Part shown: positions 39,229-41,507 of the stretch, piece after piece
Layout: every line of letters begins with the position of its first letter
Numbering within the stretch: position 1 is the stretch's first letter
Source of the DNA: Vitrella brassicaformis CCMP3155
Lineage: Eukaryota; Protista; Chromerida
Direction of reading: 5' to 3'
Length of the DNA stretch: 64,000 nt
Assembly: GCA_001179505.1 (NCBI GenBank)
Contig: CDMY01000603.1
Location: 186,001 to 250,000, forward strand
Notes under the pieces: model-generated
Databases searched by the model: none
Seen by the model: the letters and a program-made list of their open reading frames with translations, nothing else
What the model was told of the DNA's origin: nothing
Made by a program: the position numbers and the translations under genes

Positions 39229-39349
39229 TGATTGCACCTCTCAGCTGAAGGGAACTGAAGGGAGGCGCAGCTCGCAGCGAGTGCGAGCTAAAGAGGGCAG
39301 ATCTCCCGATGGCGAAAGAAGCGTCTGGGCCAACTTGAGGGCTGCCACG

Positions 39350-40669
39350 ATGATGACGGGCCCTTGCTGGGCCAGATCCCTCCTCGCCCTTCTATTTTTG
39401 GCGACCGCGGGCTTCTCTGCCGCTTTCGTGCCGCACTCTCTTCCACGCGGCGGCTCCATGTCTGCATTCCCCTCCGCAATGCGTCGCCGCTCGGTCCGCA
39501 TGTCGGCCGCTGCAGAGGTCGAACAGACGAACAGGGTGCGCCCACTGCAGGGCCTGGAGGAGGTGCAGGCAGCCATTGAGAAGGACAGCGGTGTCAACGT
39601 CATCTCAGTGGTGTTCATCCAAGCCAAGTGGTGCAAGAACTGCGCAGCCACGCGGCCCGTCCTCGAGGGGCTCGCCAAGGAGTGCGCAGAGGCCAAGACG
39701 CCAGTCAGCTTCTACTCCATCGACTTTGACGAGAGCAAGACAGCCATGACCGACATAGCACCGACCTTATCACGGCTGCCGTGGTGCCTCCTGTACGCCG
39801 CCGGCAGCGTGACGGCGTCAGAGAGCTTCGCGTGTGGCGAGTCGAAGGTTTACGGCGTGCTGAAGCCGCTGATTGACCTGTATTCCGGTCAGAAGGCTGG
39901 AGGGAGGGGAGGGGGTGAGTCGGTGGAGGTTGGTGTGACGCTCAAGCAGGAGCAGGAGAGCGAGCAGGAGCTGATGGAGGCGCTGAATGAGGTGTCGTCA
40001 CCCGCTGTCACTAAGATGTTTAACGATCTTTACAAACCACAGCCAGGTCAGCCACATGAACACGAACCACACGTAACCATCCACCCCACCTGCCCATTTC
40101 TGCCCATCTGACAGGGAAGCGGATCATCGGTGGGCTGCTGCTCGACACGCCGAAGGACGAGCTCGAGAAGCTGCCGGACCCGTCAGAGCTGGAGGCCCTT
40201 CGCAAGAAGGCGGCATCAGATCTGATCAACATCGGCGCGGACGAGAGGCGGCGCCGTGCCATCGCCGGGGCGGCCTCGGCGCTCGCCACCCTGGCCATTG
40301 GGTTCGCCTGTGTGAAGACGGGTGCATCACCACTCGCCAGGTTTGGTGCCGTCATTGTGCCGACATTCTTCACGGTTGGGTTCTCGCTGAGCGCCAAGGA
40401 GGGCCTCTGAAACGTCGCGCAAGCAGGTCGGCCGGCGCACAGCAGTGACTGCTGATTGCCTGTGATGTGTCATCTGTGTGGTGTGGCGGTGTGTGTGTGT
40501 GTGTGTGTGTGTGTCAGGGCTTTGGGACATCGGCAACGGTCTCGAGCGCATTGACGACAAGAATGTCGCCAAGGCCCTGCTTGCGAAAGTCAACAAGATG
40601 AACGCCCAAGGGCTCATCTACTCGGCAGTTGCAGCTGCACTTTTTGCAGTGGTCCCGTTCCCCAACTAG
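39350..40669 (+). CDS. Plastid-targeted thioredoxin (WCKNC) fused to a membrane domain containing an in-frame TGA; predicted selenoprotein
   Basis: Exons 39350-40046, 40115-40426, 40518-40669. Signal peptide ending SAA|FV followed by a Ser/Arg-rich transit peptide. TGA at 40408-40410 in EGL-U-NVAQA|GLWD, with the frame staying open across an in-phase intron to TAG at 40667-40669. Confidence 0.85.
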
Positions 40670-40748
40670 ATCCCACTTGACGAGGGAAATGGTCTGAGAA
40701 TGAAGTGGCGAGAGTTGGGCGGCGTGACGCATGTGGCCGCTGTGCTAT

Positions 40749-40819
40749 GGGGCCGACGAGTGAGGCGGGGGGCATAAAGTACGGGAGACGTACGTGTCCT
40801 TTGCTGAGAGGATGGCCCC
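40749..40819 (+). promoter_or_regulatory. SECIS element (type II, GUGA variant)
   Basis: Helix I GGGGCC 40749-54 / GGCCCC 40814-19. Core G-TGA 40760-63 / T-GA-G 40805-08. Helix II 40765-75 / 40794-804, fully paired with G-U wobbles. Unpaired AAA 40776-78. Mini-stem GTACG 40779-83 / CGTAC 40789-93. Confidence 0.88.
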
Positions 40820-41507
40820 GGGCGCAGATTGCCTGCTGCTGTCTGGCTCTCTCTCTCTGGGCGTGGAAGGCTGTTGTGTTGCAGTCAGTGTGTTGTAGTG
40901 CGGTTGGTGAGTGTCTGTACTTCCTTGCAAGGTTGTGCTGTGACAACAGACCCGTATGTATACGCTATCTGTTATGCGAACGGGTCAACGTGATCGTGTC
41001 AGTCCGTCGGAGAAGGTGCGAAAGGTGTCTGTCTGTCAAAAGGCGGCGGTGGCCAGCTACACCAGACTAGAAAAGCCTACACACATCCGTAAGTATCGAC
41101 ATTTGAGAACTCACACACACATGTCATGTCATGCACTCAGCAGCTGCGTACACACACCATTCGATTCATTACACAGGCAGCCGTGCAGACAGACTGACCA
41201 AGAACCCCACCCACCAAAAATACCGCAGCACAGTGCAGAAAGCTATTCACACATTCATTCACAGTCACACAGGCCGTGTTAGCAACCCACCCGCCCCACC
41301 CCATCCCACCCGCCACCATGGCATGCATGCATCAAAATCTTCAAAACCCGACAAACGGTCAAAACTGCTCCATCGGTCGGTCGCCCATCCATCCGTCCAT
41401 CCATCCACATGTCGGTGGGCAGGGCAGCAACTGAGCTGCTGCTATACTGAGCGGCTATCAACACACAGCCACACACACGGCACCCATTCCATTCTCTGGC
41501 GCCTCTC

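What the first reader, a model, noticed from the sequence alone, without database searches (positions are those of the whole stretch)
39350..40669. Plastid-targeted thioredoxin fused to a Sec-bearing membrane domain: possible self-contained membrane redox relay
Seen: signal peptide with an AA|F cleavage motif, Ser/Arg-rich transit peptide, Trx fold with an atypical WCKNC active site, a linker, then about 3 hydrophobic helices with the predicted Sec just after the second. Established: bipartite leaders with Phe at +1 target complex red-lineage plastids, and selenoproteins are rarely described in plastids. Inference: a CxxC-to-Sec electron relay at a plastid or thylakoid membrane, by analogy to VKOR-Trx (LTO1) or CcdA fusions.
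Basis: partly seen in the sequence, partly recalled or inferred. Interest (0 to 1): 0.75.

Follow-up and report, generated by a model that had tools for sequence, protein, structure and literature searches.

The report
Thioredoxin fused to membrane selenoprotein domain
This Vitrella brassicaformis gene really does join a plastid-type leader, a thioredoxin and a membrane domain with selenocysteine, but the membrane domain is a selenoprotein family known since 2007 with unknown function, and the new part is the thioredoxin fusion, which points to a redox job for that family.

Summary
Window 39350-40669 (+) is a three-exon nuclear gene of Vitrella brassicaformis. It encodes 386 residues: a signal peptide (SAA|F), a basic Ser/Arg/Ala-rich stretch, a thioredoxin domain (WCKNC), a linker and a three-helix membrane domain. 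An in-frame TGA (40408-40410, codon 331) lies five residues after helix 2.

Two spliced transcript contigs carry everything on one molecule, together with a form-2 SECIS-shaped hairpin (GUGA core, 40749-40819). The public model (287 aa) starts at Met44 and stops at the TGA.

An exhaustive protein search found 120 related clusters. 110 end exactly at the residue before the TGA, 4 have Cys there and 2 have Trp. Four fetched contigs have TGA and continue in frame with conserved sequence.

The membrane domain is "hypothetical protein 3" of Ostreococcus (Lobanov et al. 2007). It is not MSP, VKOR or CcdA. Other algae fuse the same domain to glutaredoxin, and so far only Vitrella fuses it to thioredoxin.

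Predicted topology puts the redoxin and the Sec on the same membrane face. A cis CxxC-to-Sec couple is therefore plausible; a trans-membrane relay is not. Plastid targeting is inferred and not shown.

The scan has another first-reader note on this same stretch (s1-205469).

The parts
39309..39338 (+). Short upstream ORF (9 codons plus stop, out of frame) in the 5' leader, inside the transcript contigs
   Evidence: Read from the sequence. The transcript contigs start at 39296 and 39306.
39350..39424 (+). Signal peptide, residues 1-25. Arg9 in the n-region, hydrophobic core SLLALLFLATAGF, then SAA before Phe26
   Evidence: Translation and hydropathy. The cleavage site was placed by eye with the -3/-1 rule.
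39425..39514 (+). Transit-peptide-like stretch, residues 26-55. Starts with Phe, rich in Ser, Arg, Ala and Pro, with no acidic residue
   Evidence: Translation. Matches the description of chromerid bipartite leaders in PMC6668581.
39602..39808 (+). Thioredoxin domain core, residues 85-153. WCKNC is at 39629-39643 (Cys95, Cys98); the candidate cis-Pro is Pro144
   Evidence: Pfam PF00085 at E 1.9e-5, above its cut-off. phmmer against PDB thioredoxins gives E 2e-4 to 1e-3, with the CxxC and cis-Pro aligned.
39890..40046 (+). Gly-rich and acidic linker, residues 181-232, ending at the exon 1 boundary
   Evidence: Translation. The family alignment starts at Gly233.
40047..40114 (+). Intron 1 (68 nt, GT..AG), at the junction between the thioredoxin part and the membrane-domain part
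   Evidence: Joint 40043|40112 (cut +3) in the spliced contigs of runs X1 and X2. The public model P0001 uses the same splice.
40115..40426 (+). Exon 2: start of the 'hypothetical protein 3' domain. It holds the conserved GK.I..G segment, the motif N-I-G-x-x-E-R-x-R-R (40228-40257), helix 1 (40258-40314), helix 2 (40333-40395) and the TGA
   Evidence: The invariant family columns are I, E, R and R of that motif.
40408..40410 (+). In-frame TGA, codon 331, read as selenocysteine
   Evidence: 110 of 121 related clusters end at the preceding Gly-Leu, 4 have Cys and 2 have Trp. TGA was seen in homologous contigs L001, L002, L003 and L005.
40427..40517 (+). Intron 2 (91 nt, GT..AG) holding a (GT)n microsatellite
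   Evidence: The spliced contigs go from 40427 to 40523 with 4 letters between, which fits 40426|40518. DNA runs X3 and X4 keep the intron.
40518..40669 (+). Exon 3: conserved WD..G.G hairpin region, amphipathic helix and helix 3 (40604-40660), with the TAG stop at 40667-40669
   Evidence: Translation. 40% identity to the post-TGA piece of L003, E 4e-10.
40749..40819 (+). SECIS-shaped hairpin, form 2. Helix I, GUGA (40760-40763) opposite UGAG (40805-40808), a 12-bp helix II, unpaired AAA (40776-40778) and an apical mini-stem
   Evidence: RNAfold gives -37.8 kcal/mol, z -4.15. It is the only hit of my SECIS criteria in the window on both strands, against 0.15 expected per 128 kb. It lies inside the transcript contigs. 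Rfam did not report it.

Best explanation
This is a nuclear gene of the chromerid alga Vitrella brassicaformis for a 386-residue selenoprotein.

Build (shown here):
- A bipartite-looking leader: signal peptide, Phe at +1, and a basic hydroxylated stretch.
- An atypical thioredoxin with WCKNC.
- A flexible linker.
- The membrane domain of the algal selenoprotein family first listed as Ostreococcus 'hypothetical protein 3'.
- The domain starts at the exon 1/exon 2 boundary.
- UGA-331 is decoded as Sec with the help of a GUGA-type form-2 SECIS in the 3' UTR.

Mechanism (inferred):
- Helices 1 and 2 form a hairpin. The conserved N-I-[DG]-x-x-E-R-x-R-R motif before helix 1 and the Sec five residues after helix 2 therefore lie together at the membrane surface.
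- That surface is the same side as the thioredoxin. It is the positively charged side, which in a plastid would be the stromal face.
- The Sec is the single redox-active residue of the domain. It reacts with an oxidised substrate at the membrane surface, most simply a peroxide or another oxidised membrane component.
- The resulting selenenic acid or selenenylsulfide is resolved in cis by the CxxC of the fused thioredoxin.
- In haptophyte-type relatives a fused CPYC glutaredoxin with glutathione would do the same. In stand-alone members such as Ostreococcus, soluble redoxins would.
- This is a same-side redoxin-Sec couple tethered to a membrane, not a trans-membrane electron relay.

My odds:
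- Selenoprotein of this family with a thioredoxin fusion on one mRNA: about 0.9.
- Plastid location: about 0.7.
- Redoxin recycles the Sec: about 0.5.
- Peroxidase-like chemistry in particular: about 0.25.
For: Gene and transcript:
- The organism and the public model come (P0001, 100% identity, Vitrella brassicaformis CCMP3155).
- Both introns are removed, and the TGA, exon 3 and the SECIS sit on single contigs in two runs.

Sec decoding:
- 121 clusters were found by exhaustive search. 110 end at the residue before the TGA, 4 have Cys and 2 have Trp.
- Homologous contigs have TGA and continue in frame with the conserved sequence N-[IV]-[AG]-Q-x-G-x-W-D-V-D-G and a third helix.
- Exon 3 is 40% identical to such a piece, E 4e-10.
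- The SECIS fold has z -4.15 and is unique in the window.
- GUGA-type SECIS elements with mini-stems are the rule in Ostreococcus (PMC2375036).

Family identity:
- The O. tauri and O. lucimarinus 'hypothetical protein 3' sequences printed in the supplement carry the same motif, with U at the aligned position.
- P0082 has the O. lucimarinus leader.
- A Chrysochromulina tobinii member is named 'selenoprotein'.

Redox partner:
- Five clusters have an N-terminal glutaredoxin domain (PF00462, best E 1.1e-17) with CPYC or CGYC. The P0007 cluster also starts with the tail of a glutaredoxin domain.
- P0033 and P0070 have another N-terminal domain with C-E-A-C just before the membrane domain.
- An ESM Atlas cluster of 328 bacterial proteins combines the YgaP-like TM domain with glutaredoxin, and its shape partly matches the model.

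Topology:
- The AlphaFold model of Cys-form homologue P0046 has pLDDT 94 and pTM 0.83. The Cys lies in the loop right after helix 2.
- Hydropathy and charge distribution support the same layout.

Targeting:
- Chromerid leaders are described in PMC6668581.
- 51 of 89 complete family leaders have a signal-peptide core. 33 of those have a small residue followed by Phe. Green-lineage members have basic Ala/Ser/Thr/Arg-rich leaders.
Against: - No biochemical or localisation data exist for any member, and the substrate is unknown.
- Rfam's SECIS models did not report the hairpin.
- The SECIS core is GUGA rather than AUGA.
- My SECIS scripts found nothing in the 3' flanks of L003-L006. Only a hand-found candidate in L003 folds suitably, at z -2.55.
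- The Sec-decoding machinery of Vitrella was not checked here. Only unchecked scan notes mention other selenoproteins.
- The thioredoxin domain is divergent. It is barely above the Pfam cut-off and has no close relatives. It was not modelled with confidence, so the CxxC-Sec geometry is unknown.
- Phe at +1 is less conserved in Vitrella than in Chromera (PMC6668581).
- No targeting predictor could be run.
Confidence: 0.55

Rival explanations
1. The TGA is an ordinary stop, as in the public model. The protein would end at Leu330 as a thioredoxin with a two-helix membrane anchor. Exon 3 and the hairpin would be untranslated remnants.
For: The public annotation P0001 ends there. Rfam reports no SECIS.
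Against: - An intron is spliced out 16 nt after the TGA, and the frame stays open for 55 more codons.
- Those codons are conserved with homologues.
- The same position is TGA in four fetched homologous contigs and Cys in four clusters.
- A SECIS-shaped hairpin lies in the 3' UTR.
- The family is a published selenoprotein.
Confidence: 0.04
2. The selenoprotein is real but is not plastidial. The signal peptide would send it to the ER or another endomembrane, and the Phe and the basic stretch would be coincidental.
For: Only sequence features support plastid targeting. Phe at +1 is weaker in Vitrella (PMC6668581). HECTAR classed many chromerid plastid controls as secretory in the same paper, which shows how hard the two classes are to separate.
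Against: - The SAA|F site is followed by 30 residues with no acidic residue.
- 33 of 51 signal-peptide-bearing relatives show a small residue followed by Phe, and green-lineage relatives carry transit-peptide-like leaders instead of signal peptides. That pattern fits a plastid protein family.
- The named members are all phototrophs: Ostreococcus, Prymnesium, Chrysochromulina and Vitrella.
Confidence: 0.2
3. The Sec domain is not a peroxide- or oxidant-reducing centre. It would be a chalcogen or metal handling site: a carrier of sulfane sulfur or selenium, or a soft-metal ligand at the membrane. The model is the bacterial YgaP type, where the related two-helix domain is fused to a rhodanese. 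The fused redoxin would release or load the bound species.
For: - Weak Pfam matches to the YgaP-like TM domain PF11127 occur in 2 of 120 members (E 0.013 and 0.042).
- ESM Atlas clusters carrying PF11127 match residues 24-95 of the model, with TM 0.75 by the 75-residue target.
- That YgaP carries a rhodanese domain is from my own knowledge and was not checked here.
Against: The homology to PF11127 is below threshold. The Vitrella piece gave no hit at E up to 1. No rhodanese fusion was seen among 120 members. Nothing tested here separates this reading from the peroxidase-like one.
Confidence: 0.2
4. It is a trans-membrane electron relay like VKOR-Trx (LTO1) or CcdA/DsbD.
For: The architecture is a thioredoxin plus a multi-helix membrane domain with a redox-active residue.
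Against: - The family has only one conserved Cys/Sec, with no paired cysteines in the helices.
- It has three helices, not four to six.
- There is no Pfam hit to VKOR or DsbD families.
- Predicted topology puts the redoxin and the Sec on the same face.
Confidence: 0.03

Closest known systems
Ostreococcus tauri / O. lucimarinus selenoprotein 'hypothetical protein 3' (Lobanov et al. 2007, Genome Biol 8:R198; probably counted under 'Hypo' in later algal selenoproteome surveys)
   Same: It has the same domain: the conserved N-I-D-x-x-E-R-x-R-R motif, two helices, the Ser-Ala-x-x-Gly-Leu-Sec-Asn-Ile-Ala-Gln motif, the WDVDG hairpin and a third helix. It also has an in-frame UGA with a G-preceded SECIS core.
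   Different: The Ostreococcus proteins are stand-alone, with a leader plus the domain and about 150-210 aa in all. The Vitrella protein carries a complete thioredoxin domain and a red-lineage bipartite leader in front, joined at an intron. The hairpin motif is slightly divergent (WDIGNG).
Glutaredoxin fusions of the same domain in other marine algae (P0006, P0020/P0132, P0091, P0101; the Chrysochromulina tobinii 'selenoprotein' KOO27337.1 cluster)
   Same: They share the order leader, thiol-disulfide oxidoreductase, linker of about 50 residues, then the Sec membrane domain. TGA is at the same position.
   Different: The redoxin is a class I dithiol glutaredoxin (CPYC or CGYC), not a thioredoxin. 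These are therefore independent fusions, and the electron source is probably different (glutathione).
YgaP-like transmembrane domain (Pfam PF11127, DUF2892), including bacterial glutaredoxin + YgaP-like TM proteins
   Same: Both have a short conserved Asn...Arg motif before a two-helix hairpin. There is partial shape match to residues 24-95 of the model, and the same redoxin-first architecture appears in one bacterial cluster. Two members give sub-threshold Pfam hits.
   Different: No significant sequence match was found, and none at all for the Vitrella protein. The algal family adds a beta-hairpin, an amphipathic helix and a third membrane helix, and uses Sec.
MSP, the 'membrane selenoprotein' of Ostreococcus, Chlamydomonas, Volvox and Dictyostelium
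   Same: It is a small multi-helix membrane selenoprotein of algae, described in the same paper.
   Different: It is an unrelated sequence. The MSP Sec sits in the motif Gly-Ser-Sec-Cys-Trp-Pro inside a helix, and Dictyostelium MSP has two Sec. None of this is present here.
Atypical plastid thioredoxins such as Trx-like 2 (solved structures 6lyw, 5nyk)
   Same: These are among the best PDB sequence matches of the Vitrella thioredoxin part, at E about 7e-4 to 9e-4. From my own knowledge, and not checked here, they also carry a basic residue inside the CxxC.
   Different: They are soluble single-domain proteins. Similarity is low, and the Vitrella domain has no close relative in 5.8 billion proteins.

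Membership tests
Algal selenoprotein family 'hypothetical protein 3' (Lobanov 2007) | Significant sequence similarity over the domain up to the Sec | tested here: met
   phmmer with residues 231-330 gave 120 other clusters at E 7e-12 to 1e-3. These include P0082, which carries the O. lucimarinus leader printed in the paper's supplement.
Algal selenoprotein family 'hypothetical protein 3' (Lobanov 2007) | Sec (or Cys) in the motif Gly-Leu-U-Asn-[Ile/Val]-[Ala/Gly]-Gln-x-Gly-x-Trp-Asp after the second helix | tested here: met
   Vitrella reads Gly-Leu-TGA-Asn-Val-Ala-Gln-Ala-Gly-Leu-Trp-Asp. The same motif appears in the supplement sequences and in L001, L002, L003 and L005.
Algal selenoprotein family 'hypothetical protein 3' (Lobanov 2007) | Conserved C-terminal part after the Sec, with a third hydrophobic helix | tested here: met
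   Exon 3 against the post-TGA piece of L003 gives 40% identity, E 4e-10. The helix lies at residues 366-384.
Eukaryotic selenoprotein (UGA recoded by SECIS) | SECIS element in the 3' UTR of the same mRNA | tested here: met
   A form-2 shape with GUGA/GA core, 12-bp helix II and unpaired AAA, z -4.15. It is unique in the window and lies inside the transcript contig. Caveat: no Rfam hit, and SECISearch was not available.
Eukaryotic selenoprotein (UGA recoded by SECIS) | Cys-containing homologues at the aligned position | tested here: met
   P0046, P0056, P0105 and P0118 have Cys there.
Eukaryotic selenoprotein (UGA recoded by SECIS) | Sec machinery (tRNA-Sec, SelB/eEFSec, SBP2, SPS, SecS) in the genome, and selenium actually incorporated | not testable with these tools
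   Only this 64-kb window is readable. Scan notes report other Vitrella selenoprotein candidates but were not checked. 75Se labelling or mass spectrometry is needed.
Thioredoxin (PF00085) | Profile match above the curated threshold, with the CxxC at the active-site position | tested here: met
   25.1 bits against a cut-off of 23.5, E 1.9e-5, residues 85-153. WCKNC aligns with the WCGPC or WCGHC of solved thioredoxins and PDI.
Thioredoxin (PF00085) | Thioredoxin fold with cis-Pro loop | tested here: inconclusive
   Pro144 aligns with the cis-Pro of 7xao thioredoxin. However, the AlphaFold model of the N-terminal part has pLDDT below 50 because no homologues are available.
Bipartite plastid-targeting leader of red-lineage complex algae | Signal peptide followed by Phe at +1 and a basic, hydroxylated transit peptide poor in acidic residues | tested here: met
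   The hydrophobic core is at residues 8-25, followed by SAA|F. Residues 26-55 have no Asp or Glu. This fits the chromerid logo described in PMC6668581. It was judged by eye and hydropathy, because SignalP, ASAFind and HECTAR were not available.
Bipartite plastid-targeting leader of red-lineage complex algae | Protein located in the plastid | not testable with these tools
   Needs reporter fusions, immunolocalisation or organelle proteomics.
MSP (membrane selenoprotein) | Motif Gly-Ser-Sec-Cys-Trp-Pro and similarity to the MSP alignment | tested here: not met
   The MSP alignment in the supplement shares neither motif nor layout with this protein.
VKOR (LTO1) or CcdA/DsbD trans-membrane thiol relays | Four to six helices with paired cysteines in or near the membrane, and a family profile match | tested here: not met
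   No Pfam hit on the membrane pieces at E up to 1. There are three helices and a single conserved Cys/Sec.
YgaP-like TM domain (PF11127) | Profile match to PF11127 | tested here: inconclusive
   The Vitrella pieces give no hit. Two of 120 relatives hit at E 0.013 and 0.042, below the cut-off. There is partial shape match to PF11127-bearing Atlas clusters.

The most novel reading that the evidence does not exclude
The 'hypothetical protein 3' domain may be a plastid offshoot of the bacterial YgaP-like (DUF2892) membrane hairpin, almost always Sec-containing. It would form a catalytic site at the stromal membrane surface: the Sec together with the invariant Glu-Arg-x-Arg-Arg motif. That site would be a new kind of membrane-surface selenoenzyme, for example one that reduces lipid peroxides or another oxidised membrane component. 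It would be recycled by whichever redoxin evolution has fused to it: glutaredoxin in haptophyte-type algae and some bacteria, thioredoxin in Vitrella. The Vitrella protein would then be a naturally self-sufficient version, suited to working out the chemistry of the whole family.
Probability: 0.3. Interest if true: 0.7.

Novelty: new variant of a known kind. Interest (0 to 1): 0.5.

Why it matters
- The family has been listed as a selenoprotein of unknown function since 2007.
- It is widespread in marine phototrophs. There are 120 clusters at 50% identity, and almost all use Sec rather than Cys.
- Databases nearly always truncate it at the UGA.
- Independent fusions to two different thiol-disulfide oxidoreductases give a concrete, testable hypothesis for its function and its reductant.
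- The family-wide leaders point to the plastid, where few selenoproteins are characterised.
- The Vitrella gene also shows that the public protein model is wrong at both ends. It lacks 43 N-terminal residues, including the signal peptide, and 56 C-terminal residues, including the Sec.

Tried and rejected
- Rfam at a permissive E-value found no SECIS in the window region or in six homologous loci. The hairpin was found by folding and by my own pattern scripts instead.
- Those scripts found no SECIS in the 3' flanks of L003-L006. Only a hand-found L003 candidate folds suitably.
- The word-based protein search with the 97-aa exon 2 piece found nothing.
- The same search with exon 1 found only the public model itself.
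- The same search with the family profile found only 7 proteins.
- Pfam gave nothing for the membrane pieces.
- The feature search of the ESM Atlas restricted to named clusters gave nothing for P0046.
- Foldseek against PDB gave no match at E 0.001 or better.
- VIA-align wide gave only generic helical matches, with best Z 7.8.
No bacterial gene neighbourhood could therefore be read.
- AlphaFold on the public 287-aa model gave an unusable thioredoxin part.
- A full-length model with Cys in place of Sec, and hence the CxxC-Sec distance, could not be made.
- MSP was considered and rejected. VKOR and CcdA were considered and rejected.
- Literature searches for Vitrella plus selenoprotein or selenocysteine found no paper on its selenoproteome.
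Full report
**What is in the sequence**

The region is GC-rich eukaryotic DNA with GT..AG introns. A protein search with exon 1 returned one protein at 100% identity. It is a 287-aa 'thioredoxin domain-containing' product of Vitrella brassicaformis CCMP3155, so the window comes from this chromerid alga.

The gene model I derive is as follows:

| Part | Coordinates |
|---|---|
| Exon 1 | 39350-40046 |
| Intron 1 | 40047-40114 |
| Exon 2 | 40115-40426 |
| Intron 2 | 40427-40517 |
| Exon 3 | 40518-40669 |

The CDS is 1161 nt and gives 386 residues. There is one internal TGA at 40408-40410 (codon 331) and a TAG stop at 40667-40669.

The public model uses the same first splice. It starts at Met44 and ends at the TGA, so it lacks the signal peptide and the last 56 residues.

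**One transcript**

Contigs of two runs (1817 and 1490 nt) lie on 39296/39306-40043, 40112-40427 and 40523-41000 and beyond, with no differences.
- The first joint is a 68-nt GT..AG skip.
- The second leaves four letters between the pieces, which fits a 40426|40518 splice once the shared G and the masked (GT)n are allowed for.
- Two other runs hold the unspliced genomic form.

The two spliced runs are labelled RNA only as a guess, but intron-free contigs are what cDNA gives. The thioredoxin part, the membrane part, the TGA, exon 3 and at least 330 nt of 3' UTR are therefore on one mRNA.

**The parts**

- Hydropathy shows a signal-peptide core at residues 8-25 followed by Ser-Ala-Ala|Phe.
- Residues 26-55 are rich in Ser, Arg, Ala and Pro and have no acidic residue.
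- Pfam Thioredoxin matches residues 85-153 just above its curated cut-off, 25.1 against 23.5 bits.
- phmmer against PDB aligns WCKNC (residues 94-98) with the active sites of thioredoxins and PDI. It aligns Pro144 with the cis-Pro. Plant chloroplast Trx-like 2 proteins are among the best matches, at E about 7e-4.
- The domain has no close relative in the word-indexed collection.
- A Gly-rich and acidic linker runs to the end of exon 1.
- Exons 2 and 3 encode hydrophobic helices at 281-299, 306-326 and 366-384. Codon 331 lies five residues after the second.

**Is the TGA a selenocysteine codon?**

An exhaustive HMMER search with the 100 residues before the TGA found 121 cluster representatives at E up to 0.001.
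- 110 of them end exactly at the Gly-Leu that precedes the Vitrella TGA.
- Four continue with Cys.
- Two continue with Trp, which is how TGA is read under an alternative code.

I fetched the contigs of four truncated homologues (L001, L002, L003 and L005; L004 and L006 are second copies that I did not read).
- The 'stop' is TGA in each one whose codon I read (L001, L002, L003, L005).
- The frame then continues with a conserved motif (Asn-Ile-Ala/Gly-Gln-x-Gly-x-Trp-Asp-Val-Asp-Gly), an amphipathic stretch and a third helix before a real stop.
- Vitrella exon 3 is 40% identical to such a piece, E 4e-10.

In the 3' UTR, 91 nt after the TAG, the stretch 40749-40819 folds into the classic form-2 SECIS shape:
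- helix I;
- an internal loop;
- GUGA opposite UGAG;
- a 12-bp helix II;
- an unpaired AAA;
- an apical mini-stem.

The fold energy is -37.8 kcal/mol, z -4.15.

With explicit criteria this is the only such site on either strand of the 64-kb window. Markov-random sequence gives 0.15 per 128 kb.

Rfam's models miss it. G-preceded cores with mini-stems are described as the rule in Ostreococcus (PMC2375036).

I did not verify the Sec machinery of Vitrella. Notes of this scan mention other selenoprotein candidates and GUGA-type SECIS elements in the genome, which I treat as unchecked leads.

**What the membrane domain is**

It is not MSP. The MSP alignment in the supplement of Lobanov et al. 2007 has a different motif and layout.

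The next page of the same supplement prints 'hypothetical protein 3' of O. tauri and O. lucimarinus. It has the same motifs, with U at the aligned position. One of my hits (P0082) carries the O. lucimarinus leader.

A Chrysochromulina tobinii member is named 'selenoprotein' in GenBank, although its model splices around the TGA. A Prymnesium polylepis member is in EukProt.

So the Sec-bearing domain is a known selenoprotein family with no assigned function. It has no Pfam family.

The family alignment starts at Gly233, the codon split by intron 1. Exon 1 is therefore the added part.

**Fusions**

Among 120 members:
- Five have an N-terminal glutaredoxin domain with CPYC or CGYC. Genomic contig L005 shows the complete glutaredoxin-linker-domain-TGA-tail gene.
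- The large P0007 cluster, which includes the Chrysochromulina protein, begins with the tail of a glutaredoxin domain.
- Two clusters have another N-terminal domain with a Cys-Glu-Ala-Cys just before the membrane domain.
- Only Vitrella has a thioredoxin.

Most members are stand-alone.

**Fold and remote relatives**

AlphaFold on the Cys-form homologue P0046, using the family alignment, gave pLDDT 94 and pTM 0.83. The model shows:
- an N-terminal helix;
- a long helix that begins with the invariant Glu-Arg-x-Arg-Arg motif and continues as membrane helix 1;
- membrane helix 2;
- the Cys in the loop right after helix 2;
- a small beta-hairpin (Trp-Asp-Val-Asp-Gly);
- a long helix ending as membrane helix 3.

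PDB searches gave nothing specific.

The ESM Atlas shape search gave:
- bacterial hypothetical clusters with the whole fold, TM 0.75-0.86;
- a fungal RGS/RAX1_C cluster, TM 0.77 by query;
- partial matches (residues 24-95) to clusters carrying the YgaP-like TM domain PF11127. One of these, with 328 members, also carries glutaredoxin.

Two family members give sub-threshold PF11127 hits.

I regard a distant link to the YgaP-like hairpin as plausible but unproven.

**Topology and mechanism (inference)**

Helices 1 and 2 form a hairpin. The N-terminal soluble part (redoxin, linker, conserved Arg-rich motif) and the Sec are therefore on the same face. The four Arg before helix 1 mark that face as the 'inside', which is the stromal side in a plastid.

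The family has one conserved redox residue only. The simplest reading is:
- The Sec cycles between selenol and selenenic acid or selenenylsulfide at the membrane surface.
- It is reduced in cis by the fused CxxC redoxin.
- In stand-alone members it is reduced by soluble redoxins.

The strong preference for Sec over Cys (112 against 4 clusters) fits a catalytic nucleophile. The substrate is unknown. I favour a peroxide or other oxidised membrane component. A chalcogen or metal handling role is the main rival.

A trans-membrane relay of the VKOR or CcdA kind does not fit.

**Targeting (inference)**

The leader matches what Füssy et al. describe for chromerid plastid proteins, although Phe at +1 is less strict in Vitrella (PMC6668581).

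Across the family:
- 51 of 89 complete leaders have a signal-peptide core.
- 33 of those are followed by a small residue and then Phe.
- Green-lineage members have basic Ala/Ser/Thr/Arg-rich leaders instead.

This pattern is what a plastid protein family shows in red-complex and green algae respectively. No predictor or experiment was available.

Predicted chloroplast selenoproteins are not unprecedented, for example the Chlamydomonas Sec-type GPx (PMC3095285).

**Verdict**

It is wrong about the VKOR/CcdA analogy and about the domain being undescribed.

What is new:
- the thioredoxin fusion;
- the corrected Vitrella gene model;
- the family-wide picture, with near-universal truncation at the UGA, recurrent glutaredoxin fusions and plastid-type leaders.

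Noticed in passing
window 39309-39338: A 9-codon upstream ORF (ATG...TGA), out of frame with the main ORF, lies in the 5' leader inside both transcript contigs.
   Followed up: no
window 40466-40514: A (GT)n microsatellite sits inside intron 2. The reads tool masked 40475-40522 as repeat, which is why the second splice joint was not listed as a joint.
   Followed up: partly
P0001 (public Vitrella model) against window 39350-40669: The public protein model is cut at both ends. It starts at Met44, losing the signal peptide and Phe motif, and ends at the TGA, losing Sec331 and 55 further residues.
   Followed up: yes
P0033, P0070, P0076 (homologues from transcriptomes): Another N-terminal domain of about 150 residues, with no Pfam match, is fused to the same Sec membrane domain. 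It ends with Cys-Glu-Ala-Cys just before the domain, giving a third kind of possible CxxC partner.
   Followed up: no
P0040, P0075, P0152: These database proteins carry Trp at the Sec position. Most likely TGA was translated under a code in which it means Trp, so they are read-through versions of Sec genes and not Trp variants.
   Followed up: partly
P0147 (Chrysochromulina tobinii KOO27337.1, named 'selenoprotein') and P0089: Both models skip helix 2 and the Sec region and rejoin the C-terminal tail. It looks as if a false intron was drawn around the TGA.
   Followed up: partly
L003 2401-2467: A GUGA...AA...GA hairpin with a long mini-stem and a good helix I lies about 200 nt after the stop of the intronless homologue (z -2.55). 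My automatic criteria missed it because of bulges.
   Followed up: partly
ESM Atlas rows: A fungal cluster of RGS-domain proteins with the RAX1_C domain (802 members) matches the whole three-helix model at TM 0.77 by query. This may be a shared membrane fold or a coincidence of helical packing.
   Followed up: no
window 40402-40416, L001, L002, L003, L005 around the TGA: The nucleotides around the Sec codon are alike in distant members (CTN TGA AAC [AG]T). This follows from the conserved Leu-Sec-Asn-Ile/Val residues but could also matter for recoding.
   Followed up: no
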